From contig NC_083409.1 of assembly GCF_020745735.1 (NCBI RefSeq), forward strand, positions 22,712,048-22,776,047: 64,000 nt of DNA. The letters run 5' to 3'. The notes under the pieces are model-generated. The model searched no databases. It was not told where the DNA came from and saw only the letters and a program-made list of their open reading frames with translations. Position 1 is the stretch's first letter. Each line of letters starts with the position of its first letter. Positions 3,519 through 52,337 of the stretch are shown here, piece by piece. The stretch comes from Hemiscyllium ocellatum. Taxonomy: Eukaryota. The position numbers and the translations under genes were made by a program.

Positions 3519-3524
3519 AATAAA
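3519..3524 (+). promoter_or_regulatory. Probable polyadenylation signal of C-kappa copy 1
   Basis: AATAAA followed by a GT-rich tract; conserved at 35657-35662 and in the inverted remnant. Confidence 0.65.
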
Positions 3525-5707: not shown

Positions 5708-5714
5708 TAGAGAA

Positions 5715-9235: not shown

Positions 9236-9253
9236 GCTGCCCTCTAGTGGCGA
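9236..9253 (-). promoter_or_regulatory. Candidate CTCF site
   Basis: Reverse complement TCGCCACTAGAGGGCAGC matches the core CCASYAGRKGGCRS. Confidence 0.55.
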
Positions 9254-12069
9254 GAGAGCGCTTGCACTGCTGCTGAGGATTATGGGTAAAGTCCCCTCCC
9301 ATTCGCGCCCACACAAACCAGCAGCCACTTCAGCTGCTTTATTATAAACCACAAGCTGTCAAGGCGCTGTTCTTTCAACGGTGGAACTGGACGCATGGTC
9401 ATACGAATTAGGGACAAATGAAGGAGATTCATCCTCTTCAGCCTGCTCCCCATGGCTGACCTGATTATTCACCTTCTTACCTTACTCTGACAGATTTTTG
9501 AGAAGCAATGACTGTCTACTTCTTCACTACAAGCATTCAGAGGTTTCAATTTCAATTCCAAAGACCTATGACCTTTGTCAGAAATCAAAACCCTGCTCAT
9601 CTAGATCTTAAATGAGGGAACTTATTTTAGTTTTATATTCTTCCTGAAAAGGAAGCATTGTTTTCACAGCCACGCTGTATTCTATGCTCTTGTTGATATG
9701 ACATCTGCTTTAATCAGCTGCTCTCCCATGAGAACAGCAGCCTATCCTGTCACCTTCAGTGACTGATGCACAGAAACATCCAGGTCCTACTGCCCCTACA
9801 CCCACCCATACTTGTACCCTTTAGTTTGTTTTGTCTCTCCATGTTTTCCTTCCAAAATGAATCAGTGACATCTCTTTCTGTTAAATTCTATCTGTGACCA
9901 TTTGTTCATCCCATTACCTATACCCTTTTTGAAGTTCCACACTATCTTTTTCATGAGTCGCAGTAGATCCAAGTTTCATACCATCAGCAAATTTTGAAAC
10001 CCTGCCTTGTGCACTCAGATTTAAATATTTTAAATAATTTTTAGAATGAACTATTTTATAAACTATTTTAAATCAAGCCTCAAATTTATTGCCCATCTCT
10101 AGTTGCTTGGACTGAGTTCTGAGCCAGATTATGGGGCTGTTAAGAATGAATCACGTCACTGTGGGACTGGAGTCACAGACAGGGTGATGACTGGGTTCCC
10201 TTGTCCAAACTACATTCATGAACATGACATTGAGTTTCCTGGGTTTTTTGTTCAGATCCCAGCACCTTCCTTCCCAGATATTACATGGCTCACCACCGCC
10301 CTCTCCAGGACAATTAGGGAAGTACAACAAATAGCAGCCATTTTTGTGCCCGCCCATCCCAGGAGAAATCAAAATAAATGAGATACACTTCAAATGATCA
10401 AACTGGTGTGTCTTGAATTCATCTCTTTGAAAAACTGGAGCCTAGGCGAGAAATAGAGCCATGACATGGGTGACCCTGGTTTGTCAGACTGAAAGGTGGA
10501 GTGTCCTTCGGATTGACACTGGGATCAGACACAAAATGAATTACACTCAAAGACCGAACACACGGCTATCAAAGCGGGTCACCAAACTGCAAAGAGCAGC
10601 AATTTATCTGGAAGAACTCAACAGGTATCAGTGGGTGTAAGTGCTTTCGGCAGGCAAGTGTCAGATATTGTTGAACACACAAGAAACACAGTCACACAGA
10701 AAGGAAAGCTATTGGGATAGAGCAGGGAAACGGGAATAACTGAATTTCTCCACTGAGAGCTGGAAGAAGTTTTCTTGGTTGTAACTCCTCTGAGAACAAT
10801 AAAGGTTGAAGGGCCGTTTATATTATAGACAACACTGCAGCACGCAAGAAAGGATGTTGAGTGACAGATCTCCTTTAAATTGGAAACAATATCAGAAATA
10901 AAGGTCAATGTGATTTTGGATTGAATATTGAGAGTGAGGAGATGGAGGGGAGAGTGACCATGGCAGCTGTCCTGAAGAATGGTTAGGTCATGGCTAGAAT
11001 GGTGCACAGTTAGAGGCTGCTTTGAGATACAATACATAATGGGACGTGGACAGGGGATCAAGGGTCACAAGAAATGTGCAGGATAGCAAATGGAAAATAC
11101 CATGGAAATTGCAGGATTACACGGATAGGGTCGGGGAGGTGTGGGTCGGGGTGGGGTGACCTTCAAAGGGTCGGTATGAGCTTGCTGTGCTGTGTGGCCT
11201 GCTTCCATTCTGTAGGAATTCCTCGATTCTGTGATTCTATGAAGGCCAGAACAGGATCTCAACAGTGGATGGAGGGTATTCTGATGTTCAAAAATTCTTA
11301 AACAAATAAACACAGTAAATGTAGATTTATCGTCAGTGCAGACAAACTGAAAGGCAAAATGACTTATTCTCCAGTCATATACCAGGTACAGAAAAGAGAT
11401 CAGGAAAAACATTTTGATGCAGTTATTGGAACTTAATGATGAATGATGATAAACAGAGTGCTCCATTCAAAAAAAGACAGAATTACTTTTTAGAATTTCA
11501 CTAGGCCTGAAGCAAAAGAGGAAATCAGGATCAAACAGTAATTTGAGAATATAGTACTTGAGTGAGACAAGATCCTTCTTGTGAAAACATTTCATTTTGC
11601 CTTGCTTTCTCTCCATGGATGCTGCCTGACCCACTGGGATCTCCAGAGTTTTGCTGCGCTATTTCTTACAAAATGTCTTGTTGTGTGCAAGACAAAAGCT
11701 TTGACAAAATGTCTCTTTTTTTTCAGCAACACTTGAATTTGGATCAGTTTGGAGAGAAAGCAGGGCCATGGAATCATCTTTCCCTGCAGGGAGGGAGGGA
11801 GTGTGTGTGGAATCTCCCATGGGCAGGGTTCTCCTGGCTGCCACCACATCAGGAAGGCTGGAGCTTGATGATTGAACTGAATGGACAGGGCTCACTCTCA
11901 CAGCCCTCAGGGCCATGGAGCCCCTTGTGATGGGGGCATCTGCTTGGTGTCAGGGCAGACAATGACATTGCAGTGGGATTGGAAATGGAACAACTCGACA
12001 ATGGATGCTGCACAATGGCTGCACTGCCTCTTCCTCTCTGCCTGATCCCTCCCCACACACAGGAGAAGC

Positions 12070-17696: not shown

Positions 17697-17699
17697 TAA

Positions 17700-32870: not shown

Positions 32871-33401
32871 ACCTTTTTTTAAAAAAAACTGGGAGTCTTT
32901 CAGTTGTGAGAAAAGCCATTCTATGGCACTATTAAATGAAGAGCAGGGCAGTTTCCCCCTGGTGTATTGGTCAATTGACCTCCTCCCAAAAACCATCACT
33001 AAAACTCTGATCCTCTGCTCATTATCATGATCGTATTGTGCCCAGTCTGCTGGAAAGAGCCACTGGGACATCCTGAGGTGGGACAGGTGCTACACAAACG
33101 CAAGTTTTTCTTAGTGGTTGGAGTCTCCTGATCCTGACCCTCACCCATTGTCCATGCATTCTCACCTTCCAAGGGTTATTTAGAGCACTGATGCTGTCTG
33201 ACCCGGGGACACTGAGACTTATTGCAGCCTCACCCTTGACTTCAGCACAGTGCTGGGCAGCAAGGTTTGAAATGTCATCTAGAACCTTCTACATGGAGGG
33301 GACCCAACATTACTCCATCCTGATGTGTTCTGATCCAAATCTGCTCCAATGTTTTCAGATAAAGATCTGTGAGTGGCCAGAGGTTTGTTAAAGAGATATT
33401 G

Positions 33402-33722
33402 TGTGGGCAGCACAGTGGTTAGCCCTGCTGCCTGACAGCACGAGGGAACTGGGTTTGATTACACTCTCAGGTGACTGTCTGTATGAAATTTGCACATTCT
33501 CCCTGTGTCTGCTCGGGTTTCCTCTGATAGTCCAAAGACGTGCAATTTGGTGGATTGGACATAGTAAATTGCTCCTAGGGTCCTGGGTTCTGCAAGCCAG
33601 GTGGATTAGCCATGGGGTTGCAGGGATAGTGTAGGGGGAGGGTCTGGGTGGGATGCTCTTTGGAGGGTTGGTGTGGACTTAAGGAGCTGAATGACTTGCT
33701 CCCATATTGTAAGGATTCTATG
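33402..33722 (+). mobile_element. HE1-related SINE variant; absent from the paralogous position (~690)
   Basis: SINE head and body interrupt the duplicated sequence. Confidence 0.7.
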
Positions 33723-34812
33723 ATAATGTGCTCCATCCCACTTTCCAGCTCTTACTCTGGAGGTTTTGGTGTTTCAAGTGAATATCGAATTTTTTGTAAT
33801 GTGGTGAGGTTTCTGCCTCTCCCAAACTTTCAGATAGTGAATCCTAGATCCATCCACCCTCTGAGTGAAAAACGTACTCAACTCCCGTTGAACCCTGCCC
33901 CCAATTCATTTTAATGGCTCCCCAGGGTTATTGCCCTCTCTGCTGATGGAAATCAGTCCTTTCTACCCACTCTATCCAGGCCCCTCATCATTTTACACAC
34001 CACAATCAAATCTCCCCTCAGCCTCCTCTGTTCCAAAGAAAACATTCCCAGCCAAACCAATCAGTCCTTAGATCTAAAACTCTGCATTCCTTAGAAAATC
34101 CTTGTGAATCTCCTCTGTCTACTCTCTCATAGGATCACATCCTGAAAGGCTCTAACTACAGTTTTACACAGTTGATCTGTTCACCAGAACCATACAGAGG
34201 ATTGAACTCCTGGTATCCAATATCACCTTTCCGGTTTAGTCTGCCCAACTCTGGTTGGTTTTTCATATCCCAGGGTGAGAGTCGAGATTTGGGAGCCCCA
34301 CCCTTACTCACTGTGGGAACAGATTCTAAATGATCTGGGGCTCCTCCTTGAAGACCTCCCACTGCCCCGCCACTGATTTCCCAAGAAGTCACCAGTTCCA
34401 GTCCACTTTTACTAAATTATCACATCATTTAGTAAAATGGTTTGTTCCCAAATGAAAACTTTTACACTTGTTCCGTCCCTACTCTCAATCTCACTGAGTT
34501 CTGATCACTGGCACTGAAATGCTCCCCCATTGATAGTCCTTCCAGCTGCCCACATTCATTCCCTTAACAATGGTCCAAAACTGTCCCTTCTCTTTCACCA
34601 TCACCTTCTCAGGGGCAATTAGGGATGGTAATAAACACTGGCACTGCCAGTGAGACTCGCGTCCCAAGATACAATTTAAACAATACCTGTCCTTTTGTCG
34701 GGTTTATTACGTTTTGGTTACAAACGTTCAAAAGGATTTTCTTTGCCAGTTAATGTTAGAGTTGAAATCCTTTCGAACGTCAGAGCTTAAAATTGTTTCT
34801 CTTGTCTTTCAG

Positions 34813-35141
34813 ACCGTGAGAACTCTCAGCCCAAGCTGACCCTGCTGCCCCCCTCCCTGGAGCAGGTCAATGCCAAGGGCACTGCCACCCTGGTGTGCCT
34901 TGCCAATCACTTCTATCCCGATGAGCTGGAGGTGCAGTGGAAGAAGGATGGCGCAGTCATTTCGGACAGGGTTCAGACCAGCAACTACCTGCGAGCTTCG
35001 GACAGCACCTACAGTGTCAGCAGCCTGCTGACCCTCTCTGGGTCTGACTGGGAGTCCAACGCTCACTTCTCCTGTGCCCTCACCCACGTGACCCTCCCCT
35101 CTCCCCTCAGCAAGAGCATCAGGAGATCAGAATGTGTGTAG
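34813..35141 (+). CDS. IGKC: Ig light-chain constant exon, kappa/type III, copy 2
   Basis: Acceptor tcttgtctttcAG at 34811-34812. Open frame xRENSQPKLTLLPPSLEQV...RSECV*. 8 nt differences from copy 1 in 329 nt. Confidence 0.92.
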
Positions 35142-35656
35142 AGTGTTGGAGACAGTCCATAGAGGAGACACAACTTTAAACAGAACAGGGCTGAGCTGGC
35201 AGGACAAAGGTCATTGTCAGCACTGAATTTCAACTCTCTTCCTTCTCAGGACTGGCTCAGAGACAGGTGAGGTTCAGGGGTTAAGGCAGATCATTAGGAC
35301 ACTGGGAGCTTTATGCTGTATCTGTGTGCTGTCCCTATCCTGGGATTATTTGATGGGGACAGTGTTGACTCCTATTGCCAAGTAAAACATCTCAAAGATA
35401 CTGAAAACTGTCAGCTGTACAAAACAATGTGAACCTCAGAAGTCTCTGCTTCAGTAAACCAGATCTCCTTCCTGCTCAGCTGCCAGTTCCAATTTAAGGT
35501 TTTGTCACTGTTTTAAGGGACAAGATTCTCATGCTATTGAGAAAATCTCCACAAGTGTTTTCCTCAAGCTCCAATGTGGCTGTGAATTTGTGCAGCTTCC
35601 TCTGTCTGGGCTGTTAATTGCTGACTGTTTTCTGTCAATGTCAATCTGGAAAAGGG

Positions 35657-35662
35657 AATAAA
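35657..35662 (+). promoter_or_regulatory. Probable polyadenylation signal of C-kappa copy 2
   Basis: AATAAA in the same context (gaaaagggAATAAAg) as 3519-3524. Confidence 0.65.
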
Positions 35663-36615
35663 GACGATGATGATTTGGTCTCGTGTACGCTGTGGAAATA
35701 GACTATCCGCCTCAGCTGATTGATTGACAGGTCACCCAGCCAAGGACACATCTGTAGTTTGAACCGGGAGCCAATGACTTTCAAATGACCCCTTTGATCT
35801 GGAATCCGTCGAGGTTACAAGATTCCAAATAGAACAGAAACTGAAAGCTGTTGGGACTCAATCATTCCAATCGGAGACATTCCCTCTTCACTCGGTTGGT
35901 CCAGACCCAGCTGATGGGATCACACTGTGCACTCTCCACTGCATCCTGGGGAACACACTAAATGATTTAGATTACAAATGTTAGAGGCTGCAGTCACAAG
36001 ATTCATTCCTCTCACTTTAGCCTGTCACAGCTCAAAAGTGAGGTCTTATTTCAGACAGAGGTTCAATCAGGAACTCAGAGCATACCTGAGCCTGTATGGG
36101 TGTGACTGTTACCCAATGGTGTCTGTAGGTACGTGTCTCTGAGTGCGGGTGTGACTGTTACTCAGTACTGACTGTAGGTGTACCTGTCAGTGTGGGTGTG
36201 ACTGTTACCCAGTTAATGTCTGTAGGTGTGTGCCTCAGCTTTGCAGCATTCTATCCCTCTTTGAGTTTGATTTGTGTGTGAAACCCAGTTGGTGATTTCA
36301 GATTTGTTCAGAGGGGAGGGGATGGAGTGTGCTGTGTCCAGGGAAATTGCGATCGTATCCTGGCCCCCATTCCCATATTCCTGTTAAAACTAGATTAACG
36401 GGATGTTGTTATCCGTGTATTTATAATTGAGATTTACAGGATAGAGTGCAGTCACTTACTGACAACCCCACCTCGGTCCAGAATGTGGTCATGTTGATAC
36501 TAATCGAACGTTTGAAGTGAATGGGGAAGAACTGGGATCTTCCTATACAGCTAGCTGAAAGGCCAGTGGTGTAGAGCGAGCACAGAACACAGCCAGACCA
36601 ACAACAGTGAGTTAG

Positions 36616-36621
36616 TTTATT
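36616..36621 (-). promoter_or_regulatory. Candidate RABGAP1L polyadenylation signal
   Basis: AATAAA on the minus strand ~1 kb past the stop, at the end of an AT-rich, repeat-free UTR-like tract. Confidence 0.5.
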
Positions 36622-37619
36622 GTTGAAAATACAATTGTTACAAATATAAGCTGCCCCCAAGAGATGGTTGCACTAGGGTGAACAACAGGGGGCAGCTGGG
36701 TATTACAGATAAACACACCAACAAAAGGAACCTGTTCACTGGGACAACAGGCTGCTGCAAGTTAAGCTTAAAATTTCCCCAGATTTTAACTACATTTAAT
36801 ATTGAACTTGTTTGAAAATTAAAGAAACAAGATAGATCATTTGTTCTTTGTACATTGTGCAAATCGAGTCCTTTAGCTATTCCTCTGTCACGTCCACGCA
36901 CATTGGTTTGTAAAGACTGAAAAGGGAAAAATGGTGGACAGACCATTGCATAAAGATCCAAGCAGAACATTAAGTGGGTAAGGCAGGATGAGCAGAGTGC
37001 ATCATGGGAACTGACCTGAGCAAAACATCATGATCTCTGAGAGTCAATGAATAGGAGCAGCTCTCAGTCCAGTGAGAGAGAGAAGGAAGCAAGCAAGCAA
37101 GCAAGGTCTGGAGAGCAAGTAGTTCAGAAAGAGGGAGCACACAGGAGAGTGTGAAAGAAGAAAGGAGAGCAAAGAGAGACTGGAGAGAGTGAAGAAGATT
37201 CTCAGTTCGCCTGCGCAAGGTGACAAATCAGCAAACACTGGCATTTCTCACAGGCCCTTATCTTTCACAGTGCCTGGAGAACTGACCTGTTCACCACATT
37301 AAACCAATGAGACTCTCAATTAACTGCTGTCAATGAAAACGACAAGGTACTGATAGTAAAATACAACATTTCTTGTTCAACAATATACAAACCATCAATC
37401 CGTCAGATTGGATCCCAGAATGAGGAAGGATTTGAATGTACAAAGAGTTGGACAGCTGGCCCTGAGCAGGGCCATTTCTTGAGCTCGAGGATGGTGTCAG
37501 CGGTGAGGGGACTTGCTGTTGAGTTCAGGTGGTCATCCTCAGGATGCTGTTCCCTCACCATCAGGGGCTGAGAAGACGGGGTGGAGGGGGGAGAAGGGGG
37601 GAGGACGAGGTGTGTGGCA

Positions 37620-38175
<556 letters not shown>

Positions 38176-38942
38176 CTGGGAATTGAAAAGGCAGCAAGCC
38201 TGAGGCACTCGGCAACGACCCTGCGCTTGCGTCTTCTTATCCCACCACCGTGTCGAGAGTTTAATTCCTTATCAGGAAGAACAACGCGACCGGCTGGGCC
38301 AGTATTTACTGTACGTCCCCAATTGCCCTAGAGAAGGGGGTGGTAAGCTGCCTTACTGAAACGTTGCAATCCATTCAGTGTTGGGGCAGCCACAATGGTG
38401 CTAATGTTAGGATTTTGACCCAGCAACACGGAAGGAACAGCAATATCGTTTCTATGCTAGAATGGAGTCTGGCTTTCCTGATGAGACCTCAGTACTACCA
38501 TGAACAGCAAACACTGTTTGATCTCAAAGTCAGCTCATCCCCAGGAGAAGGTGGGTGAGCTGCAACTGTGCATGGTTAAGAAATGCTGGCCCAGTCGGTG
38601 GTGTCCACGTCCCATGAGGGAATAAGGAGACATTGATTGTTGGGTATTTAGCTCACTGTAGAAATCTATTCACAATCAGGAGGCTGGAGGGGCAGGAATC
38701 CTTCAAGACATTTTAGAAACATTTAGCGGAGTCCTTGAAATCCCGTAGCATGCAAGGCTACAGGTCAAGAGCTGGGAAATGGGATTGGAACATATTTGAT
38801 GATCAATGGGGACACCATGGACCATAGCACCACTTTCCGAGCGGGAAAGACTGTGACCACACAGGATATAACTGGTGATTCCATGTGAAGACAGCAGAAA
38901 ATCAAATGACAGAGTGGGGATCAGAGACTGCTCGATTCCTAC

Positions 38943-39014
38943 CTTCACGAGTTCTAGTTCCTCCTTACTCGCCGCCTGCTGTCTCTCCAACCGTGTACTC
39001 AATTGTGAACAAAT
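38943..39014 (-). CDS. RABGAP1L: RABGAP1L exon: ICSQLSTRLERQQAASKEELELVK
   Basis: 72 nt, ttgttctgttcAG acceptor and GTAGGA donor, phase 0. Confidence 0.92.
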
Positions 39015-39951
39015 CTGAACAGAACAAGAGGGAGAGTTAGTGCTGCTCTTGTCACCTCACTGATCCATCCGCATAATACTCAGCTGATAACTTTATCAGA
39101 CTGCACTGTACATAAGTTTAGTAAGAAGGCCTTAATTGTCATGGATTAAACAGGATTTTGTTCCAAAGGAAACTGTGTCCCTACTTCTGGATATCCTCAC
39201 AAAAGGTATCCATCTGTCATGTACCCTCAGGGTCTTAAGTTAGCCCAGCATTATCTGTGGAGAGAGAAACAGAGTAGCGCTTCAGATCTAGTAAGACTTC
39301 TGTAGAAACCTTAACTCTTATTTCTTTCTCCGCAGATACCGCCAGACTCGCTGAGTTTCTCCAGCATTCTGCTTTTGATTTCAGATTTCCAGCATCCACT
39401 GTCCACTGCTTTTCTCCCCGAGAATCCTCCGTTTCAACAGGATCACCTCTCATTCCCTAAACTCTAATGTGTACGCATATCCAACCTTTCCTCAGAGGAT
39501 AACCCCCCTCATCCCAGGAATGAGTTGAGTGAACTCTCCCTGAACTGTTTCTGACAATTACATCATAACATACAGAAGGTGAAATGGCCATTCAGCCCAT
39601 CAAGTCTGTTTCACGATTCAATGAGATTATGGCTGGTCTGATCATCTTCACTTCCATTTTCTTATCTTTTCCCCACAACCCTTGATATCCTTTCTTAAAT
39701 GAGACCAAAATGATACACAGCTCTCCAGATGAGGCCTCATTAACATCCAGCAGGCAGTAATTGTTAACTGGTGAGATGGCCACCAGTACAGCCCTGAGGA
39801 TTGATTCAATGTACAGGTACTAACTCCTGGCTCCAAATACTCACCATGTTACACTTAACACTTAAAAAAAATGAAAACATTCTTTTATTATTCAAATGAT
39901 CAATATAATAGATTTTATTGTTTTGCAACTGTTTTAGGTTCTTCCAAAATG

Positions 39952-40326
39952 AGGTGGCATGGTGGCTCAGTGGTTAGCATTGCTGTCTCACAGCACCAGG
40001 GACCCAGGTTCGATTCCAGCTTCGGGCAACAGTGTGTGTGGAGTTTGCACATTCTCCCCGTGTCTGCGTGGGTTTCCTCCGGGTGCTCCGGTTTCCTCCC
40101 ACAGTCCAAAGATGTGCAGGGCAGGTGAATCGGCCATTTTAAATTGCCCATAGTTTTCGGTACATTAGTCAGATGGAAACAAGTTCACACTGACCCTCTG
40201 CAGAGTAACCCACACAGACCTATTTCCCTCTGACTAATGCACCTGACACTATGGGCAATTTAAAATGGCTGATTCACCTGACCTTGACAGATGGACTTGT
40301 TTCCACACTGTACGGAATCTAATCTA
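39952..40326 (+). mobile_element. HE1-type SINE plus an inverted SINE fragment (RABGAP1L intron)
   Basis: A/B boxes; internal reverse-oriented piece at ~40175-40285. Confidence 0.75.
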
Positions 40327-41822
40327 AGTAGTAAATCAAAAACACACACACACTAGGTATCCCAGTGCCAAGGATCCAGGTTCAATTCCATTTTTGGGCA
40401 ACTGCTCGTGTGAAGTTTGTACATTCTCCCAGCATCTGGGTGAGTTTCTTCTGGGTGCTCCGGTTTCCTCCCATAGTCCAAAAGCTTGCAGGCTGGCTGG
40501 ACTGATTGGACTTGTTAAATTGCCCGTAATGTCCAGGGATGTGCAGGCTCAGTGGATTAGCTGTAGAAGATGCAGTGGCGGGTGGGGTGTGGGGCACGAG
40601 GGGACAGGGATGTGTGGGGGGTGGGGGTGGGGCAACAGGGATGTATGTGTGTGGGGGGGGAGACGGTCTGGGTAGGATCCGCTTCAGAGGGTCAGTGTGG
40701 ACTCTATTGCCAAACGGCCAGCTCACACTTTTCGGATGCTATGACCTTCCTATTAATTTGCATGCTAACTTTGTGGTTCATGTACCAGGATACCCAGATC
40801 CGTCCGTGCCTTCCCGCACAATGGGGATAAGATTTGAATGCTTGCTTAGAATCGTTGTGCTAGTCATGGGGTAATACTTGCTAAAGGGAGCTCTTGCTGG
40901 GACAGAAGGTTAGGAGAAAGCAGTCGGGACTTTCCAGTGCATTACTAGTCAACAAGTGGTTGTGGTAATTTCAGGATTCGTGCTATGAAAATGCAGGAAC
41001 AGGTACAGGCCTCAAGGGGACGTGACAGTGGAGTGCTGCTTGCACAGAGCATTCAGCAGGCACTGTGGTCACATCAGCAAAGGAAGACTGGGAATTTTCA
41101 ACTCGAATGTCTCAAAACTACAACAGAGGTCCACTCAAATATTAGACTGAAGGTGAAACCTTGGTGTGTGCCATCAGTCAAAGGACTGAGAACACAAAGC
41201 CCAGGATCCACAGTGAGACAAACTGACCTACAGTGACCTAGTTTAGCAAATTCCCATCTCCTGAATTGGAAGTACCAATCTTTTCTGCCCAATAAATCCT
41301 GTTCATTTACTTTCCAAATTGCTGCTTACCATCGCTGCAAGGAAGGAAGGTTATTCCCCAACAAGAAATTTCTTCCTCTTGGCTTCAGTCTAGCATTTAA
41401 ATCCCAACATATCCAGCATGGTGAGGGAATAATCCATAGGGAAGAGGAGGAGTGGGTGAGAGACAGGGAGGAGTTCTCAGGTCTACCCAGAGAGTAAACT
41501 GTATTATTTTTTCTCCCATACCGTCCACTGAGGGCTTATCTCTGACAAACTGGTCCCATTGTCTGGGCCAGTGAAGGAGGGGCTGGCAGATGGACTGCAG
41601 TATACCCATCCACTGCACGGGTTCTCCACCGTTCCTTGTCAGCATCAGCCGGGAAGCTGGGCCCCAGCAGGGTGCAGCTGCTTTAGGATGGTCACCCACT
41701 GACATTAAGAAAGGAATGAGAGACAAACCCCACACTCAGACCCTGAAACACCAGCCACCCGATGCACCATTTGGTTCAACCCAATCTGCTCAGTGCCCAT
41801 CTCCCAGGAAATAGGCAGGTCA

Positions 41823-42274
<452 letters not shown>

Positions 42275-42819
42275 TCAGGGGGCTGGGGGAGAGCATACCT
42301 TGCTCTGGAGATGGAGCTGCATTCAATTGCCCAGCTCCAAGCCACCCAGTCAGTGAGCACACCATGCAGTATAACTGATCACATACAGGCCTTTCTGTTG
42401 GGGTATACAGCACAACCAGCCTGAGCTCTCTGCTTCCAACAAGAATGGTGTAGGTTCAAGTCCCATGTCCGAGATTTAAGAGATGGCGTTGAACTCTGAC
42501 AATGCAGTGCACACAGTGGGGAATGCTGCACTGTCACACCGACTGTCTTTTGGATGAGCCCTTGCCCTCTCAGGCGAGTGGAAATCCTGTCCTGGGTCGA
42601 ATTCCGAACAGCAGAGAAAGTCTCCACTTGCTGAGTGTCACTTGCTTCCCACTCCCCACACCCCAGCTCCCGGACCCTTCCCATATTACAGTCATGGCGA
42701 GATTTCCAAAATAATGAATCTGCTGAAAACCAGGTTGAAACACCTGGAGGTTGAGAGAGACGGTTCCCTTTCGATTTGGGATCTTGGATTAGAGAGTGAG
42801 GAGAAGTCATGTCCCTTAC

Positions 42820-42930
42820 CTGATCCAGGTCACTCCTCAGGGCGATCTTGCTGGTCACAAGCTCATGAGCCAAGTCATCGTTCTCCTGCTCCAGGCGCAA
42901 GCTGGCCTCCTGCAACCTCCGATTCTCCCG
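42820..42930 (-). CDS. RABGAP1L: RABGAP1L exon: RENRRLQEASLRLEQENDDLAHELVTSKIALRSDLDQ
   Basis: 111 nt, tgcAG acceptor and GTAAGG donor, phase 0, coiled coil. Confidence 0.93.
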
Positions 42931-43060
42931 CTGCACAAATCAAACCCACACAGATTCGCTCACTCAACCAGTGGCAATAACTTAACCTGCTGAGTGCTGC
43001 AAAGTCTCCAGTCACATGCTCAGAGCCTGACTCTCCCCACTCATCAGAGTCACCATCATC

Positions 43061-43336
43061 CTGGGTCTCCACCTCATTCCCCAGTCATGGAGTCTGGACC
43101 CTGAGCCTCCCCCTCACTCCCCAGTCACGAAGCCTGGGTCTGGGCCTCCCCCTCATTCCCCAGTCATGGAGTCTGGACCCTGGGTCTTTCCCTCACTCCC
43201 CAGTCACGGAGCCTGGGTCTGCATCTCCCCCTCACTCCCCAACCACGGAGCCTGGGCCCTGGGTCTCCCCCTCACTCCCCAGTCATGGAGCCTGGATCTG
43301 GGTCTCACCCTCACTCCCCAGTCACTGAGCCTGGAT
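43061..43336. repeat. Minisatellite, 7 units of 39-40 bp
   Basis: Consensus ctgggtctccccctcactccccagtcayggagcctggrcc; unit lengths 40, 39, 40, 39, 40, 39, 39. Confidence 0.9.
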
Positions 43337-45179
43337 CTCCCTCTGTTCCCACCCCCTCCCCCTGTCACAGAGTCTGGGAGCGAGTCATGAAGTAGCTCTG
43401 AGCCTCGAATGTCCCATCACAGGATAGCAAGGAAAATCCCTATTGAAGGAGGGGATGACATGCTGGGCTACGTTGTCTCGAGGAAGCTGTTCAATATTGA
43501 ATGGAACCAGCAGGAAAGGGCTGAACAACCAAGTCTCTGGGCCATAAGCAAATGGGAATGGGATATGGAACAGGCAGATACAGAGACGAACACTCACAAA
43601 GAGGAGACCAAACTTGAAATGAGATACTAATACACAGTAGATGGAGTTTAATGTTGGATAGTGTAAGATCATGTACCTTAGTCAGAATGATCAAAAGGCA
43701 GTCTATTATGTAAATAGAGAGAGATTCCAAAACAGTGCAGTGCAGAGGGATTGGTGTGTTCTTGTGCATCAAACACAGTTAGTGCAGGTGCAGCAAGCAG
43801 CAATTGAGAAGGCAAATGGAATTTTATCCTTTATTGCCAAGAATGGAAATTGAAAAATAGAGGAATCTTGTTATAACTGTGCAGTTGCACTTGGAGAGCG
43901 GTGTGTAATTTTGGTTCCTGGAAAGGATGGACTGTCTTTGGAGGCCTCCTCCTATTTCTGATGTCCTTGTGCACTCCAGTGTGGTTCCCTCACTTCAGTA
44001 GCAGCCTCCAGTCTTTGGGTGGTGCGGCCAAATGACCTGCCTTGCCCAGGCAGTTCCAGTTCCCACATTACAACAACGTCTGAACGTTGGAAGTACCGTT
44101 TTACAGTCAATGGAATACTGAATCATAGAGACGTACAGCACAGAAACAGACCCTACGATCCAACTTGCCCATGCCAACCAGATATCCTAATCTAATCTAG
44201 TCCCATTTGCAAGCACATGGCCCATTTCCGGGTGCCTTTTAAATGGTGCAATTGTACCAGCCTCCACCACTTCCTCTGGCAGTTCATTCCATACATGTAC
44301 CATGCTGTGTGAAAAAGTTGCCCCTTAGATCTCTTTTATATCTTTCCCCTCTCACCCTAAACCTATGCCCTCCCCCACCCCAGGGAAAAGACTCTGTTTA
44401 TTTACCCTATCCATGCCCCTCATAATTTTATAAATGTCTATAAGGTCACCCCTCAGCCTCCAGAGCTTCAGGGAAAACAGACCCAGCCTATTCAGCCTCT
44501 CCCTCAAATCCTCCAACCCTGACAACACCCTTGTAAATCTTTTCTGAACCCGTTTAAGTTTCACATCTTTGAACATTCTGAGCTCATGAACTATGCAACA
44601 TAAAACAATTCTCTCTCCTTTTTGGTTCCTCTCCATGCCTCCCTACCTGTTCCCTCATAACATCCCTTCCTTGTTTAAAAGTTGGAATGAGTCATTAATC
44701 TCTGGGAGAACTTTGTGGCAACATTTGAGACTAATTACCACCTCCTCAGTGGGCTGTATGTATAAAGGTGTGTCTTGATCTGGATTGTCTCCAGTCAGTC
44801 TGTGTTATCGTCCTGGGATCAGACAGTGCTTACCAACCTTAGACCCTATGATCTGATTGAGATGAAGGGTGAGCTGTGCCGGGTATTAACACAGGGGTCA
44901 GTGCAGTGACGCAGGGATTACCCATTTCACAAGAGAGTAAATGGAAGTAACAAACAGTGTGAATGGTGACACCCTCACCAAGTCCCGGGGTGGGAGGGTA
45001 CAAGAACAGTAACATCCTCAGATAGGATGCTAAAATTGGTTATCCCCAGTAACAACAACACTCCGCAGAGACTGTCTGTTCCTATTCCTTGCTGTCCTGT
45101 AATGCATGTCCTTGGTTTGGTTTATATTTTCTCAGTTGTATTTCAGTTTGACGAGGTGATTCAGTAACAAGTAATCCAA

Positions 45180-45630
45180 TTTCATATTTCGTGTAGCAGC
45201 AGATCTACTGAAGGTCATCCTTTCATTTGGAGCTTGCCCAGGTTTCTGTCCAGGCTGATACAGCATGGTCTACCAGTGCTGCTCCTATTGGGCTAAACCA
45301 TCACACACGAGGGAATCTGACGGGCACTTTCTCTTTGTGCTGACAAAGGGAGAGATTTGCTTTTACTGCGATGGTGGCCAAAGAAACAAGTCAGTGAATG
45401 TGTTTCTAGCTGAGCAGAATGTCCTGATGTTCATGATGGGATTAACCTCAACAGTTCCCACTTGTCTTTACACTGACAGTGGGGCAGGAAGTCACCATGC
45501 AGTGGTCTCCTGGCTCACACTGTGAAACCAAGTTGATGGTATAACTGCCGAGAGCAAGACAATGCCTTGGACTCACTGAACAACCAGAGGCTTCAGCCAA
45601 CAACTGGGTCACAGGCAAATGGCGTGTTGT
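45180..45630 (-). pseudogene. Possible heavily decayed Ig/TCR V-like relic (paralog ~7680-8125)
   Basis: Leader-like LPVTQLL ending in GTGAGT, 57-nt intron, FR1-like LPAPLSV, then LVC...HW*...QKPGQAP. Many stops, extra spacing, no clear YYC or RSS. Confidence 0.3.
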
Positions 45631-48600
45631 ATAAACTCTCAGTATCTCAGGGAACAAACACAACTACTGAGCTACAAAACCGAACAGGATATTTTTTATT
45701 ACAAATTAGCACTCCAAATTCCAAACGCAATATTTACAAAACCTGGATGCAATCTAATTTCAAATGTAGCTACAAAGACGACAGCATTTTCTCTGAAAAC
45801 TCGACGATAATGGGATGAGAATTCAAACACCCACCCACACTTCATCACACTGTGTTGAAGACGCACTATCCTCATCACAACACGTTTATAAAGCTCTTCA
45901 TAACACATAAGGGGAGAGAAACATTGAAAAATGTGTTACCATGAGTGAGGGTCCATTAAAAACTCAGATCATGATACTAAATGATTCCAGTCATAAACAA
46001 ACAATGATGCATTTACACCATTAGGTTGTTTAACAATTTTTAAAAAAATTTGATCAGAAAGAAAATAAGGACAATGTGCAGATTGTTGAACAGGCCCCTA
46101 CACCTGGTCCTGAGGCAGGAGCCCAAGCTCCAACACACTGGCCTCACCTCACACCAACCTTCACAGTGCGGGGTCATGAACTCCGGCAATCAACCCCTCT
46201 GGGACAGGGATGGAGTGAGGGAACAGGGACAATAGTAGAAGAGGCAATAAGGAGTAAAGCAAGATGGAGAGTGTGTTTTGGAAAGGGGTTAGAGGAGGAA
46301 ATATACTTTGTGCCACTCAGTACTGACATCGTCTACGTGTATCACAGAATGAACATAACAGCACACTGTGAAGACAAACAATAGTCACAACAAAGTACTT
46401 TTTCTCAGGAATATTGATGTATCATATCGCAGGGGACATTTCCATTGTGGTGCAATAACTATTGTGGTTTTAAAGCTGTAATCGCTCTCGCGACTGAGCT
46501 GGTTAGATCCTAGCAAAGCCCAAGTTTATTTGTACTGTTCATGGACAGAGAAACAGTTGTCCTCTCGTGACTTTCCAGAGCTTGTACTGCTCCCCCTACC
46601 ACTGGCATCCAAAAGACCAACAGACAATTCAATGGATTCCAACTTTGACCTGGGTACCCATTTCCACTACCCTTTGTCAGAAAGAGTTCTTCCTGAAATC
46701 ATCCCAATTCTAATTTTATCAATTTTTTTCCTGTTCTGGACTCTGGCACTGAAGAAAACAGTTTACATGAACACTTAAATCATCTCCAGGGGAAAAGCAT
46801 CACTTACACAACCTGTTCTTTCTCATTAACAATTGGGGGCAGGGCAGCTTAACAGGGAACAGTCTCCCTTTTAAAACGAGGTGGTGCTTTCTTGCTGAGG
46901 GTCAACAATCTGTGGAATTCTCATTTCTACATCAGAATGGAGATTGGATCATTGAGTTTCCTCAAGGCTGAGTGAGACAGATTTTTCATGAACATAACAG
47001 TTAAGGACAATGGGGGAGACAGTAAAGCAGAAAGTGCAGCTGAGATCACACCCAGATGAGCAGTGTGATCTTCTTCATTAGCACAGCAGCTCCCAAAAGG
47101 CCTGCTCCTGCTCCTGGGTCCTATGGTTCTGGCAGATGGCGGAAGCAATCCTGGACCCCCATCTTTCCTTTGTCATTCACTGACAGAAATATAATTTCAA
47201 AACAAACATTATTTTCTTTAACAAGACCAATTCAACTCATTGCAGCATTTTTATCAGCTCTCTTTTCATCTCAACAGGGTTTTAGAAACATGTGTTTTGC
47301 ATTACGTTGGAGAGGAGACAGACACAAGACAGAGCGAAGCCTGAGAGAACAGAGACAGCTTTCACTCTGCACAGCAAGGCTGTCACGGGAAACATCTGAT
47401 GAAAGGCATGGAGGGGGCTGAAGAGGTGAGAGGCATGGGAAAAGAGGACTTCCAGTTCAAAATAAAAGCTCAACACAGATCGCCACCATCTAATTAATAA
47501 ATGTGAGACAATCACAAACCCATAACAGTACCAGTGTGGTGGCTCAGAAGCTAAAAGGCAGACAGCATAGAGTTACGATATTCCTTCTCAGGACGTTAAT
47601 GTCATTGACAAGCCTCATATATATTGCCCATCTCCAGCCGCTCGGACTGAGTTCTTTGCTGAGGGAGGTCATGGGGCCGTTGAGAATGAATCGCGTCACT
47701 GTGGGACTGGAGTCACAGACCGGGTGATGGCTGGGATCCCTTGCCCAAAGAACATTCTTGAAGATGACATTGAGTTTCATGGTTTTTTTGGACAGATCCC
47801 AACGCCTTCCTTCTCAGATATTACATGGCTCACCACCGCCCTCTCCAGGATAATTAGGGAAGGGCAACAAACAGTAGCCACTTTTGTACCCGCCCCATCC
47901 CAGGAGAAATCAAAATAAATGAGACAAACTTCAAATGATCAAACTGGTGAGGCTTGAATTCATCTCTTTGAAAGACTGGAACCTAGGCCAGAAACAGCCA
48001 TAACATGGGTGACCCTGGTTTGTCAGACTGAAAGGTGGAGTGTCCTTTGGATTGGCACTGGGATCAGGCACAAAATAAATTGCACTCAAAGACCAAACAC
48101 ACGGCTATCAAAGCGGGTCACCAAACTGCAAAGAGCAGCAATTGAGGCTCTGCCTCCCCATCTCCCTTCCCCCTTCTCAGGTGGATCTGCAAGATCCCAC
48201 TCAGAAGGGATTCCCTCAGGTATCCTGCTGAAAAATCAACTGGTGCCAAAATAGATTTGTCTAGTCATTCATTTGCTGGTCGTGGGATCTCACCATCTTG
48301 CCCACGTGAACGTGACTGCACTGTGCACACCGCTTTAAATATCCTGAGACATCGTTAAAGGCTGTTACAAACAAGAGTTCTTTCTTCTTCACCATGTAAA
48401 GAGGGAGCAACAAGCAAGTGATAATACACACTGAGCGTAAACACTGAAGCTTCAGCTGAAAGGCTTTTTACACTATGTTAACCTGCTCCCTGGGCATTTC
48501 CTTCCAATGTCCGAGATGGTTATCAGGCTGGGATGGAGGCTGACAGATCACATGGAATCCTTCAGGCAAGGTACACAAGGGCACAGTCCAGGCTTGCTGC

Positions 48601-50050
48601 AAACATTGGCCTTCTCCTATTGAAGGGCTGGGAGATTCTCTATGGCGGTTTCTAGTGCACGTCCTCCGTGGAAATATCACAGACTTTACTGAAATGAAAT
48701 GAACTGAAAGAAGAGAAGGAAATGGCAAGAATTAACCAGACAAGGATGAGCATCAAGAGAGATGGGAGTGTGTGGAAGGTTCAGTGCCAGTTAAAAATTC
48801 CAATTGGATTTCACAAGAGAAGCTCAAATATTTACAAAATATATAACCAAGTACTGTGCGCATTGCTCCCACAATACATTTGGAAACTGCAAATGGAATC
48901 ACACGGAATATCATTGGGACTAGGAATGCAATGTCACCTTCTCAAAGTTAAATGAAGGATGGGCAATGAAAGCTGATCTTGCCAGTAACACTCATTCCAA
49001 AAACTAATGAAAACATATCCATTCCCCCTTATTCCTAACCATGAAGGGAGATGCAGTACTGTCAACCTTGGTTTTGGGGAGATGGCGGCTCAGTAGTAAT
49101 GTCATTAGTCTATTAATCCAGAGGGCCAGGCAAATTCCCTGGGACACAAATTCAAATCCTACTATGGCAGGTGGGGAATGTGCAGTCCATGAATACATCT
49201 GGAATTGAGCGCCACCCCACAGTATTGGTGATCATGGTGGTAATATCATCACTTGGTATAAAAACACATCTGGTTTACTGATGTCCTTTATGGAAGGATT
49301 TCAAGACAAGATTTATTAGGATGTTGCCAGGGGTGGAGAGAGATTGGAGAAACTGGGCTTTTCTCTTCTTAGAGCAGAGGAGATTAAGACAGGACATGAT
49401 TGAGATGCATAAAATTATGAAGGGTCTGGATCAGAGGGATAGGAAGGAACTTTCCCTCGGAGTGAAAATCTTTTCAGAGGGTAGTGGGAATCTGGACCTC
49501 ATCGCCTGCAAGTGTTTTGGAGGCAAAAACCCTCACCACATTGAAGTATTATTTAGATGTACACTCGTGGTGACAAGGCATACAAGACTATGGGCCAAGT
49601 GCTGGGAAGTAGGATTAGAAGGTAGGTGGGTGTTTTTGACTGGTTCAGGCCCATTGGGTCGAAGGGTCTTGTTCTTGTAGACCCGTTGTCGATGTCTGAG
49701 TCTGCAAGGACTCCAGACCTACCCTTGTCTGTCATTTGCAAAGGCCATACAATCCACTCAGTTCTAGGGCAGTTAGGGATGAAGAACAAATACTGTACTG
49801 GTCATGCCAGTAATACCTGCATCCCAGGAAAGAATAGAGAGACTCAGTGGTAGCACCTTCAAGCTCCACTCCATACACTGGAGCACTATCCTGAGGCTGG
49901 AATGCCATCTGCTGGATGATCGGTTGAACTACTGTCCTCTCAAGGCTTTGTCATTGTCTAAGGGCCAATCTGTCCAGGGTACTAGTCAATATTTCTCTTA
50001 TAACCAATGGCATTAAAACAGATACAAAAGCAAATACTGCAGATCTTATA

Positions 50051-50332
50051 GGGCGGCACAGTGGCTCAGTGGCTCGCACAGCTGTCTCACAGCACTGGGG
50101 TCCCAGGTTCGATTCCAGCAGGCGACTGTGTGGAGTTTGCACATTCTCCCTGTGTTTGCATGGGTTTCCTCCCACAGTCCAAAGATGTGCAGGTCAGGTG
50201 AATTGGCCAGGCTAAATTGCCCATAATGTTAGGTGCATTAGTCAGAGGGAAATGAATCTGGGTGGGTTACTCTTCGGAGGATCGGTGTGGACTGGTTGGG
50301 CTGAAGGGCCTGTTTCCACACTGTAGGGAATC
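50051..50332 (+). mobile_element. HE1-type SINE
   Basis: A/B boxes and body. Confidence 0.8.
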
Positions 50333-52244
50333 TTTTTTAAGAAAAAAACAAGATGCTGGAGAAAGGTAGCCTCTGTGGGGAGAGGAGGAGTGAATGTCTT
50401 GGGTTCAATGATGTCTTATTGAAAAGGCAACACCTTGAAACCATAAATCTCTTTTCTCTCTCTCTCTCTCTCTACGTGCTGGCAAACCTGATGATTCTTA
50501 CTGCCCGAAAATAGCTCGCCTGACAAATTAGTGGCAGTTTCTCACATTCGAGCCACCACACAAAAAATATCAAATTGGTCATAACACCCTTCAGAACATT
50601 ACAAGATTGTGAAAGTTGTCACAGAAATAGGGTCCTCTTTGTTTTAGATGACAGAAAATTTGTTTTTTTTAAAAAAAAAAGAAAACAAATACAATCTGGT
50701 TTCAGGGTGGATAATTTCTTCCTAACTAGACTCAATACCTTTGGAGAAGGAGAAAGCAGCTGCTGGAGGTCAGAGTCAAAAAAAAAAGTGTGATGCTGGA
50801 AAAGCACAAGGTCAGGCAGCATCCGAGGATCAAGACAGCTGACGTTTTGAGCATCTCAGTCAGAATCATTGGCGACCTTTAAGCGGCAATTGGATAGGTA
50901 CATGGATGGGTGCTTAATCTAGGATAGATGTTCGGCACAACATCGTGGGCCAAAGGGCCTGTTCTGTGCTGTATTGTTCTATGTTCTTCCTGATCATATT
51001 CCTCATCATATTCCTGATGAAGAGTTTATGCTCGAAACGGCAACTCTCCTGCTCCTCAGATGCTACCTGACCAGCTATGCTTTTCCAGCACCACACGTTT
51101 TGACTCAGGACCATAGGAGAAATCTGAAGTAAGGTTTCAGCGAAAGTTGCAGAGGTCGGACAGGAAGTTTTTCGTACACATCTATGGCAACTAGATATCC
51201 CACTAACAGAGAGGTCTTTTCCTTGTAATTTCCCCAAGGGTGGTACCAAGATGAGTCCAATGGGCTTCGCTCAGCCATGATGCTGGTTATGTTTGACAAA
51301 ACTAAATCGCTCATTGCTTAGTCTACAACAGACCGAGACGGGAGGCGAAAACATCTGAGTGGTGGACAGCTTTGGAAACCACAGGCCCCAAGTTTACTTC
51401 CCCAGCATTTAAGGTCCCTTGTGGCAGTGTTCCTACCTCCTGGACCTGGAGATCTGGGATCAGGACCTACCTGCTTTAGAGGGTATATAACAAGAACAGA
51501 CTGATTGGAAAATGTCCCTTGCCACATCAGATCTCATGATATGGCTGAAATGTCTCTCTTCTGAATGAAATCTCAGCTGTTCTTGAATTTACAAGTTGCA
51601 ATTGCTTCACCCAGGGAGTGGGCTCCTTGCATTGACCACTCACTCAAGTCACGCTTCTGTAGATTTAATTTGAGACGCCTGGTTCTGCTGGTCTGGACCA
51701 GCATGCTCTGCTATATTCTAGTCCCTGTGACAGTGCCATGGTGCTAGGAAGAAGTGAGTAACCTAGCCTGCAAAGAACTGGCTAGTGAAAACTAATCTTG
51801 CTAACCCTCCTGGACATCAAAAGGAGATGACATGTGTGAGTTATCAGTGAAAAGTGCTTCGTGAATTACCGAGCCGTGTGATTGCTTGGATGAGGTGAAA
51901 AGCCCAGATTGAAGGGGAAAACGATTCTGGGAAAAACACCTCTGACCTGGTTGTGATAATTAAAAACTAACCCTGTGTGATGCATGGTCATGGACTAGAG
52001 GCTCCACATAGCTCAGAGTGGTCCTAAACATGGCTGCCCTGTCCGCCCCTTACTGTAGTCTGAGCAGATCCCTTCGCACAGCCTCACAGAAATCGGCTTG
52101 AATGGCTGATGCACAAGCTTTGTCATTTAGTCAGTCGCTAGTTTCAAGCAGCAAGCCACCCCCCACCATCAACGCACAACCAACACCATTCCTCGTCACA
52201 AGACAGCTTCAAGAAACCTCACTCCGACGGGACACTTCCCCTAC

Positions 52245-52337
52245 CTTATATCTGTCAATCGGGTCTTCCTGATGTGCCTGCTGCTCTCTCAGGGTTTGAT
52301 ACTCCTTTTCATATTTCTTCAGCTTTTTCGTTGGCAC
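52245..52337 (-). CDS. RABGAP1L: RABGAP1L exon: VPTKKLKKYEKEYQTLREQQAHQEDPIDRYK
   Basis: 93 nt, AG/GT flanked, phase 0. Matches the post-TBC segment of vertebrate RABGAP1L as I recall it. Confidence 0.88.

What the first reader, a model, noticed from the sequence alone, without database searches (positions are those of the whole stretch)
34813..52337. Ig light-chain duplicon interleaved with RABGAP1L
Seen: an intact C-kappa exon ends ~2.5 kb from the RABGAP1L stop, with convergent transcription and poly(A) signals at 35657 (+) and 36616 (-). The other half of the block that accompanies C-kappa copy 1 sits inside the 9.3 kb intron between the VPTKK and RENRR exons. Established: shark Ig genes occur as dispersed miniclusters. 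Inference: this cluster is physically entangled with a housekeeping trafficking gene, and duplicating it necessarily copied RABGAP1L sequence.
Basis: partly seen in the sequence, partly recalled or inferred. Interest (0 to 1): 0.72.

Follow-up and report, generated by a model that had tools for sequence, protein, structure and literature searches.

The report
Orphan shark kappa exon beside RABGAP1L
A stray but intact antibody kappa light-chain constant exon, with no variable or joining segment near it, lies 2.5 kb tail-to-tail from the end of a working shark RABGAP1L gene. It is the leftover of an old local duplication and an ordinary by-product of a several-hundred-copy gene family, not a functional entanglement.

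Summary
An intact C-kappa exon (34813-35141, +; AATAAA at 35657) ends 2,479 bp from the stop codon of RABGAP1L (37620, minus strand; AATAAA at 36621-36616).

The window carries the last seven RABGAP1L exons. All have AG/GT splice sites and are in phase 0. They are 94% identical, without gaps, to whale-shark RABGAP1L. RNA contigs of the same species show the last two introns spliced.

A second C-kappa exon (2660-2988) heads a colinear block. Its first half matches 32887-36229. Its second half matches 43496-48143, inside the 9.3-kb intron. Non-coding divergence is similar in both halves (K2P about 0.1-0.3), and each copy has its own SINE or LINE insertions. This fits one old duplication.

- The window has no V or J anywhere, so copy 2 is an orphan C exon, not a cluster.
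- The 7.3 kb holding the RABGAP1L 3'UTR and six exons is absent from copy 1, so only intron and flank sequence remains shared.
- RNA contigs leave a gap of about 0.5-1 kb between the two 3' ends.

The scan's notes list a similar C-kappa/RABGAP1L pairing 10.1 Mb away on the same chromosome. I could not check it.

Verdict: real, ordinary, low interest.

The parts
34813..35141 (+). C-kappa constant exon, copy 2. It is intact (C1-set domain, both cysteines, C-terminal Cys, TAG stop) and carries private substitutions P15L, G52R and R84H relative to copy 1 and to homologues.
35142..35680 (+). C-kappa copy 2 3'UTR, with AATAAA at 35657-35662
   Evidence: 88.5% identical to the copy 1 UTR
32887..36229 (+). 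Block A of copy 2: the 3' part of the J-C intron, the C exon, the UTR and a short tail. It is colinear with 143-4103. A private SINE lies at 33410-33720. A 49-bp minisatellite at 36098-36229 marks its end.
   Evidence: high copy number in the genome
36600..37619 (-). RABGAP1L 3'UTR, with AATAAA at 36621-36616. RNA contigs of the same species cover 36721-37389 at 100% identity. A related species' RNA contig runs down to about 36168.
37620..37769 (-). RABGAP1L last coding exon (ELEHH...KEST, then stop)
   Evidence: splice joint 37769/37978 seen in an RNA contig
37978..38175 (-). RABGAP1L penultimate exon (GKVLS...KCKIQ)
   Evidence: splice joints on both sides seen in RNA contigs
38943..39014 (-). 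RABGAP1L exon (ICSQL...ELVK)
41835..41918 (-). RABGAP1L exon (IKEVF...EYKQ)
42071..42175 (-). RABGAP1L exon (VEDKA...ESAQ)
42820..42930 (-). RABGAP1L 'RENRR' exon
52245..52337 (-). RABGAP1L 'VPTKK' exon, the first RABGAP1L exon found in the window
36230..43495 (.). A 7.3-kb segment present only in copy 2. It holds the RABGAP1L 3'UTR, six exons, their introns, SINEs and a 39/79-bp tandem array at 43060-43335. It has no counterpart in copy 1.
43496..48143 (+). Block B of copy 2, inside the 9.3-kb RABGAP1L intron. It is colinear with 6083-10604 of copy 1. It has a private LINE-tail insertion at 44120-44565 and no Pfam-recognisable coding remnants.
45465..45685 (.). Conserved non-coding core within block B. 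It is about 95% identical to 7960-8175 and includes a 94-bp exact run, in surroundings that average about 82% identity. Its function is unknown.
143..4103 (+). Block A of copy 1, with an intact C-kappa exon at 2660-2988 and AATAAA at 3519
4104..6082 (.). Copy 1 filler, lying where copy 2 has the RABGAP1L exons. It holds a Penelope-like fragment (4301-5084, about 65% identical to 59052-58245) and two tandem SINEs (5410-6035).
6083..10604 (+). Block B of copy 1, with a private SINE at 6982-7271

Best explanation
The window holds the genuine, single-copy, transcribed 3' end of shark RABGAP1L (its last seven exons, on the minus strand). Tail-to-tail with it is one member of the species' very large kappa (type III/NS4) light-chain family. 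That member has been reduced to an orphan constant exon with no V, J or promoter in reach.

I infer the following history. An old segmental duplication of at least 15 kb copied the C exon, the RABGAP1L 3' part and part of the 9.3-kb intron. In the daughter copy (copy 1, 32 kb upstream) the useless partial-gene segment of 7.3 kb was later lost, and a Penelope-like element and SINEs took its place. Blocks A and B were left almost adjacent.

The two C exons stay 97.6% identical while their flanks are 74-90% identical. The most likely cause is gene conversion within the kappa family, or residual purifying selection.

Shown: the anatomy, the orthology, the splicing, the absence of V and J, and the colinearity with similar divergence in both halves. 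Inferred: the order of events, and that C-kappa copy 2 does nothing.
For: - C exon intact and C1-set.
- Its nearest database relatives (83-87% identity) are joined to kappa-type V-J sequence...YYCQQ...FGKGTKLRL.
- No V or J in 64 kb.
- Seven RABGAP1L exons with canonical AG/GT sites, all in phase 0.
- The joined 270 aa align without gaps to whale-shark RABGAP1L residues 148-417 at 94%, and score higher against RABGAP1L than against RABGAP1.
- RNA contigs of the same species match 36721-37389 exactly and carry the joints 37769/37978 and 38175/38943.
- A 2,617-nt DNA contig from another sample of the species spans 35824-38441 with no mismatch. Its depth of about 25 is the local single-copy level.
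- The colinear chain has ten blocks.
- K2P is 0.17-0.32 for the non-coding parts of block A and 0.10-0.30 for block B, against 0.025 for the C exon.
- Each copy has its own SINE or LINE insertions.
- The block B ORFs have no TE domains.
- Copy 1 has no RABGAP1L exon remnant.
Against: - Block B could be part of the canonical tail of many kappa clusters rather than a copy 1/copy 2 speciality.
- Contig depth suggests that a few closer (90% or more) paralogues of the block A tail exist and stop before the RABGAP1L UTR. This hints at a recurrent duplicon boundary near 36.1-36.2 kb.
- The missing segment in copy 1 brackets the 3'UTR and six exons with only 0.4-0.6 kb to spare on each side. That is tidy for a random deletion.
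- No outgroup locus could be fetched, so the direction of events is inferred by parsimony only.
- Whether C-kappa copy 2 is silent is not shown. RNA contigs over the exon carry the family-consensus letters rather than copy 2's private ones, but contigs drop rare variants.
Confidence: 0.6

Rival explanations
1. Blocks A and B together are the standard tail of the kappa minicluster duplicon and occur behind many C-kappa exons. The layout at RABGAP1L then arose in one of two ways. Either two separate duplicon copies landed, one downstream of the gene and one in the intron, and each was later trimmed. Or the whole kappa family was seeded from this locus, and the exon-free version was the one amplified.
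For: - Block A is clearly high-copy.
- A few paralogues at 90% or more appear to end near 36.1 kb, without RABGAP1L sequence.
- Block B contains an ultra-conserved core. It resembles an unchecked scan note of an invariant 127-bp element a few kb behind other C-kappa exons (s1-213641).
- Other unchecked notes place RABGAP1L-type exons next to kappa segments 10.1 Mb away.
Against: - The two-insertions version needs two insertions plus two deletions, against one duplication plus one deletion.
- Blocks A and B show the same divergence range between the two copies.
- The copy number of block B is untested.
Confidence: 0.25
2. The second-half similarity (43496-48143 against 6083-10604) comes from independent insertions of unannotated high-copy transposable elements and does not reflect any duplication of the locus.
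For: - The window is rich in transposable elements.
- The segment 47290-48143 has a third copy in the window, inverted, at 18296-19870.
- A LINE tail and SINEs are interspersed.
Against: - Five blocks lie in the same order and orientation with near-constant offset (37,287-37,826) over 4.6 kb.
- Four of the five match nothing else in the window.
- They hold no TE protein domains.
- Their divergence equals that of block A.
- The obvious TEs are the parts that are not shared.
Confidence: 0.07
3. The juxtaposition is an assembly misjoin or a collapsed or duplicated haplotig within a repetitive kappa array.
For: - The stretch 35141-35824 is high-copy and no short-read contig bridged it.
- An unchecked note reports a nearly equal-length (17,523 against 17,525 letters) C-kappa/RABGAP1L finding 10.1 Mb away. 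If the two are identical, that could signal a false duplication.
Against: - An exact 2.6-kb DNA contig from another sample runs from the kappa-tail homology (35824-35944) into the RABGAP1L exons, and a second contig continues to 39940.
- A related species' RNA contigs cover 35924-37068.
- Exon order and orientation from 52.3 kb to 37.6 kb match orthologues without gaps.
- The two in-window copies are about 20% diverged and have private TE insertions, which no assembly artefact produces.
Confidence: 0.04

Closest known systems
Shark type III / NS4 (kappa) light-chain miniclusters (Lee et al. 2000, J Exp Med, PMC2193156)
   Same: The C exon belongs to this isotype family. It is a multi-copy family with pseudogenes, it shows concerted evolution of coding parts, and it uses J-C splicing in phase 1.
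   Different: A minicluster is V - about 0.5 kb - J - intron - C. Here V and J are absent from the whole 64 kb, so this is a C-only remnant.
Orphan or decayed Ig C exons noted elsewhere in this genome by the scan (s1-231750, s1-207284, s1-198192, s1-207241; unchecked notes)
   Same: An intact-looking kappa C exon without V or J, Penelope-like elements at the break, and non-Ig genes as neighbours.
   Different: Here the neighbour is resolved to the exon. It is shown to be expressed, and part of its intron is shown to be shared with a second copy.
Mammalian IGL/IGK loci with interspersed non-Ig genes and orphons (my own knowledge, for example human 22q11 IGL with VPREB1, TOP3B, PRAME; IGK orphons)
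   Same: Ig gene segments and unrelated housekeeping genes are interleaved, and segmental duplication scatters non-functional Ig segments.
   Different: Those are translocon loci and mostly V orphons. Here a C-exon orphan lies in a minicluster-type genome.
Segmental duplications that capture partial genes
   Same: The duplication spans the 3' part of a host gene, and the daughter copy then decays or is deleted.
   Different: No exon remnant survives in the daughter, so only intron and flank sequence records the event.

Membership tests
Ig kappa (shark type III/NS4) constant exon | Single C1-set Ig domain with two intradomain cysteines and a C-terminal cysteine for the H-L bond | tested here: met
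   Pfam C1-set, E 1.8e-21 (copy 2) and 9.5e-23 (copy 1). Motifs ...TLVCLANHFYP......FSCALTH... and ...RSECV are present.
Ig kappa (shark type III/NS4) constant exon | Closest relatives are C regions joined to kappa-type V-J | tested here: met
   83-87% identity to sequences carrying DTIMTQSP...YYCQQ...FGKGTKLRL. No formal isotype tree was built.
Ig kappa (shark type III/NS4) constant exon | Phase-1 splice acceptor used by J-C splicing | tested here: met
   The acceptor is cag|AC at 34813. Contigs of a related species carry J sequence (GKGTKLRL) joined exactly at 34813/34814.
Shark V-J-C light-chain minicluster | V segment with leader and RSS within a few kb upstream of C | tested here: not met
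   tblastn with a catshark kappa V gives no hit below E 0.4 in 64 kb. There is no YYC-type ORF and no heptamer-spacer-nonamer.
Shark V-J-C light-chain minicluster | J segment (FGxGT) upstream of C | tested here: not met
   No FGxGT J in any frame, no match to the J DNA with up to 3 mismatches, and no tblastn hit. The J of copy 1 could lie beyond the window start.
RABGAP1L (orthologue of human 1q25 RABGAP1L) | C-terminal coiled-coil region colinear with RABGAP1L and closer to it than to RABGAP1 | tested here: met
   94% identity without gaps to whale-shark RABGAP1L. 76-77% to teleost and bat RABGAP1L against 65-66% to tetrapod RABGAP1.
RABGAP1L (orthologue of human 1q25 RABGAP1L) | TBC (Rab-GAP) and PTB domains | not testable with these tools
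   Those exons lie beyond the window end. No further exon was found in 52.4-64 kb.
RABGAP1L (orthologue of human 1q25 RABGAP1L) | Transcribed and correctly spliced | tested here: met
   RNA contigs of the same species match exactly and carry the GT..AG joints 37769/37978 and 38175/38943.

The most novel reading that the evidence does not exclude
The roughly 215-bp conserved core in block B (45465-45685, matching 7960-8175, with a 94-bp exact run) may be a kappa-locus control element kept by selection. In copy 2 it sits inside the RABGAP1L intron, separated from its C exon by six RABGAP1L exons. RABGAP1L intron sequence would then be part of the founding kappa duplicon. That would mark this 1q25-like (MHC-paralogous) neighbourhood as the place from which the shark kappa array expanded.
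Probability: 0.12. Interest if true: 0.55.

Novelty: new member of a known kind. Interest (0 to 1): 0.22.

Why it matters
It gives one base-resolved example of how the shark kappa array spreads and decays. A duplication carried a C exon together with part of a neighbouring housekeeping gene, the gene part was later deleted, and the C exon was kept nearly identical.

It also places kappa segments in a RABGAP1L (human 1q25-like) neighbourhood. A 2025 paper states that the genomic distribution of shark IgH/L miniclusters 'is not well known' (PMC12227049).

It has no evident consequence for RABGAP1L or for antibody production. For annotation, it warns that an intact-looking C exon here should not be counted as a functional light-chain gene.

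Tried and rejected
- Searches for V and J (protein motifs, RSS patterns, a J DNA pattern, tblastn with catshark V and two J peptides) all found nothing.
- RABGAP1L exon remnants in copy 1: none.
- Further RABGAP1L exons, or the first exon of the short isoform, in 52.4-64 kb: none.
- Rfam over the whole window: no family. A fold of the conserved core gave z = -1.4, which is not significant.
- Known B-cell enhancer motifs in the conserved core: none is conserved in both copies.
- Pfam on ten block B ORFs: nothing.
- The PDB sequence search could not separate kappa from lambda, because multi-domain chains dominate the list.
- Fetching orthologous loci failed. The whale-shark gene range is 107 kb, so no DNA was returned. 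The catshark sample file was too large.
- The single-cell raw RNA run of the related species laid no reads, so it was no test.
- The search of earlier findings by sequence with the 94-mer came back blank.
- Literature searches found no paper linking RABGAP1L with shark light chains.
- Overlapping antisense 3' ends: not seen in RNA contigs. This is a weak negative, because contigs cannot show transcript ends.
Full report
**1. What is at the coordinates**

The open frame at 34791-35138 contains an Ig constant exon. It starts at 34813 behind a polypyrimidine tract and the acceptor cag|AC, and it ends with ...RSECV and a TAG stop at 35139-35141. Pfam calls it C1-set (E 1.8e-21).

Its nearest database relatives (83-87% identity) are fragments in which the same C region follows a kappa-type V-J, DTIMTQSP...YYCQQ...FGKGTKLRL. 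One of these is a Scyliorhinus torazame protein. The exon is therefore shark type III/NS4, that is, kappa (family described in PMC2193156). The only AATAAA in the next 1.1 kb is at 35657.

**2. The neighbouring gene**

Seven exons lie on the minus strand: 52337-52245, 42930-42820, 42175-42071, 41918-41835, 39014-38943, 38175-37978 and 37769-37620. The last one includes the stop codon. All have AG/GT boundaries, lengths divisible by three and good polypyrimidine tracts.

- An exhaustive HMMER search with the 66-residue exon returned RABGAP1L and RABGAP1 proteins, with RABGAP1L on top.
- The joined 270 residues align without a gap to residues 148-417 (the C-terminus) of whale-shark RABGAP1L at 94%, and to catshark RABGAP1L at 92.6%. 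They align to teleost and bat RABGAP1L at 76-77%, but to tetrapod RABGAP1 at only 65-66%.
- The stop codon is 2,479 bp from the end of the C exon.
- The minus-strand AATAAA is at 36621-36616.
- The VPTKK-RENRR intron is 9,314 bp.

No other RABGAP1L exon is in the window.

**3. Read evidence (contigs only, so no copy numbers or transcript ends)**

*RNA of the same species.* One run of the same species behaves as RNA. Its contigs cover 36721-37389 at 100% identity. They carry two joints, 37769/37978 and 38175/38943, with GT..AG ends on the minus strand, exactly as predicted. They leave 35736-36695 empty. RABGAP1L is therefore transcribed and spliced here.

*DNA of another sample.* A DNA run from another sample of the species gives one exact 2,617-nt contig over 35824-38441 and another over 38412-39940. 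Both have depth about 25. The first starts inside sequence homologous to the tail of C-kappa copy 1 and runs into the RABGAP1L exons. This argues against a misjoin on that side.

*Copy level.* Depth over 34392-35735 is 3,000-15,000. The C exon, the end of its intron and its UTR therefore belong to a family of hundreds of copies. This agrees with scan note s1-228448, which speaks of a roughly 200-copy array.

*Related species.* A run from a related species behaves as RNA: its depth is very uneven, and its contigs join J sequence (GKGTKLRL) to position 34813/34814. This confirms the acceptor. Its RABGAP1L UTR contig reaches down to about 36168.

*3' ends.* In both RNA-like runs the two 3' ends stay about 0.5-1 kb apart.

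*Expression of copy 2.* RNA contigs over the C exon carry the family-consensus letters at 34949, 34952 and 34968, not copy 2's private ones. Expression of copy 2 is therefore not shown, and it is not excluded either.

**4. The duplication**

Self-comparison gives a colinear, same-strand chain from copy 1 to copy 2.

| Copy 1 | Copy 2 | Note |
|---|---|---|
| 143-680 | 32887-33401 | block A |
| 674-1055 | 33722-34090 | block A |
| 2125-3791 | 34281-35944 | block A, contains the C exons |
| 4009-4103 | 36100-36229 | block A, a 49-bp minisatellite |
| 4103-6083 | 36229-43496 | gap: no similarity |
| 6083-6717 | 43496-44084 | block B |
| 6771-6948 | 44597-44769 | block B |
| 7274-8511 | 44803-46045 | block B |
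| 8767-9271 | 46054-46591 | block B |
| 10074-10604 | 47609-48143 | block B |

- Kimura distances of the non-coding blocks are 0.17-0.32 in the first half and 0.10-0.30 in the second. The C exon is at 0.025 and the UTR at 0.126.
- Each copy has its own insertions: a SINE at 33410-33720 and a LINE tail at 44120-44565 in copy 2, and SINEs at 5410-6035 and 6982-7271 in copy 1.
- The second-half ORFs have no transposon domains. Four of its five blocks match nothing else in the window.

This is what one old duplication of at least 15 kb would leave.

**5.

- No V, no J and no RSS exist anywhere in the 64 kb. Copy 2 has at least 34.8 kb of mostly transposon sequence upstream. It is an orphan C exon, not a minicluster. 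The V-J of copy 1, if it exists, lies before the window start.
- The 7.3 kb between the two halves in copy 2 holds the RABGAP1L UTR, six exons and their introns. It has no counterpart in copy 1. Copy 1 has there about 2 kb made of a Penelope-like fragment and two SINEs. The fragment is related to the GIY-YIG-bearing element at 58-59 kb.
- The duplication therefore left RABGAP1L intron and flank sequence in copy 1, but no exon.
- The exons of a conserved gene cannot have been inserted between blocks A and B. The parsimonious order is therefore duplication across the gene's 3' part, then deletion in the daughter copy. This order is inferred, not shown.

**6. The C exons**

The two exons differ at eight bases in seven codons, three synonymous and four non-synonymous, plus the first base of the exon. 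Three of the four replacements (P15L, G52R, R84H) are private to copy 2 when compared with copy 1 and the database homologues.

The near-identity of the exons against about 20% diverged flanks fits gene conversion within the family, or past selection. The counts are too small to tell the two apart.

**7. Rivals**

- *Canonical-tail rival.* I could not measure the genome-wide copy number of the second half, because the read tools were exhausted. It could be the standard tail of many kappa clusters. Depth in 35928-36119 (about three times the single-copy level) hints that closer paralogues end just before the RABGAP1L UTR. I give this rival about 0.25.
- *Independent transposon insertions* (0.07). 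The constant offsets argue against it.
- *Misassembly* (0.04). The exact contig, the gapless exon order and the diverged copies argue against it.

**8. Context from the scan's own notes (unchecked leads)**

- The same chromosome is said to carry kappa segments over more than 17 Mb.
- Orphan C exons are noted next to CEP350-like genes.
- A second 'kappa C exon tail-to-tail with RABGAP1L' is noted 10.1 Mb upstream. Its length is almost the same (17,523 letters). I could not examine it, but it bears directly on which history is right.
- RABGAP1L and CEP350 are 1q25 genes in human (my own knowledge).

**9. Comparison and novelty**

Multi-copy shark kappa genes, pseudogene members and concerted evolution are established (PMC2193156). 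Orphan Ig segments and non-Ig genes interleaved in Ig loci are familiar from mammals.

No paper in the held library links RABGAP1L with shark light chains. A 2025 study says the genomic distribution of the miniclusters is poorly known (PMC12227049).

This is a new, well-resolved member of a known kind. It is real, tidy and of low general interest.

The one item worth a further look is the conserved non-coding core at 45465-45685, matching 7960-8175.

Noticed in passing
window 45465-45685 and 7960-8175: A non-coding core of about 215 bp is about 95% identical between the two copies and includes a 94-bp exact run (45578-45671 = 8071-8164). The surrounding block averages about 82% identity. It has no Rfam match, no significant fold and no known enhancer motif shared by both copies. 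It might be the invariant element that the scan noted behind other kappa C exons (s1-213641), or it might be a gene-conversion tract.
   Followed up: partly
window 14457-15161 (minus strand): A third, truncated kappa copy holds only the last ~24 bp of the C exon plus the 3'UTR. It is 87% identical to 35329-35699 and lies inverted, so it is tail-to-tail with copy 1. No C-domain coding sequence lies next to it.
   Followed up: partly
window 58084-59275 (minus strand) and 4301-5084: A Penelope-like retroelement lies at 58084-59275; the ORF at 58084-58539 has a GIY-YIG domain. A copy about 65% identical fills the place in copy 1 where copy 2 has the RABGAP1L exons.
   Followed up: partly
window 18296-19870 (minus strand), 10074-11541, 47290-48143: A repeat of about 1.6 kb is present three times with different truncations. 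The copies at 10074 and 47609 are colinear parts of the duplication, and the third is inverted and lies elsewhere. Its nature is unknown.
   Followed up: no
window 16064-17697 and 23941-25592: A 1.65-kb inverted repeat at 96% identity flanks a reverse-transcriptase-bearing region (RVT_1 ORF at 20151-20747). This is the subject of another first-stage note (s1-210553).
   Followed up: no
window 40756-40935: An exact octamer (ATTTGCAT, 40756) and an exact classical kappa-B decamer (GGGACTTTCC, 40926) lie 170 bp apart inside a RABGAP1L intron, in the segment specific to copy 2. This is probably chance.
   Followed up: no
window 36168-36700: In a related species an RNA contig continues from the RABGAP1L 3'UTR past the 36616 poly(A) signal to about 36168. 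The RNA contigs of this species stop at 36721. The 3' end of the gene may differ between species, or it may be longer than the AATAAA suggests.
   Followed up: no
proteins P0001 and P0002: The best database matches to the C exon are filed as 'hypothetical protein [Aeromonas veronii]' and 'immunoglobulin domain-containing protein [Salmonella enterica]'. By their sequence they are kappa light-chain fragments of a cartilaginous fish. This is host or sample contamination in bacterial assemblies.
   Followed up: no
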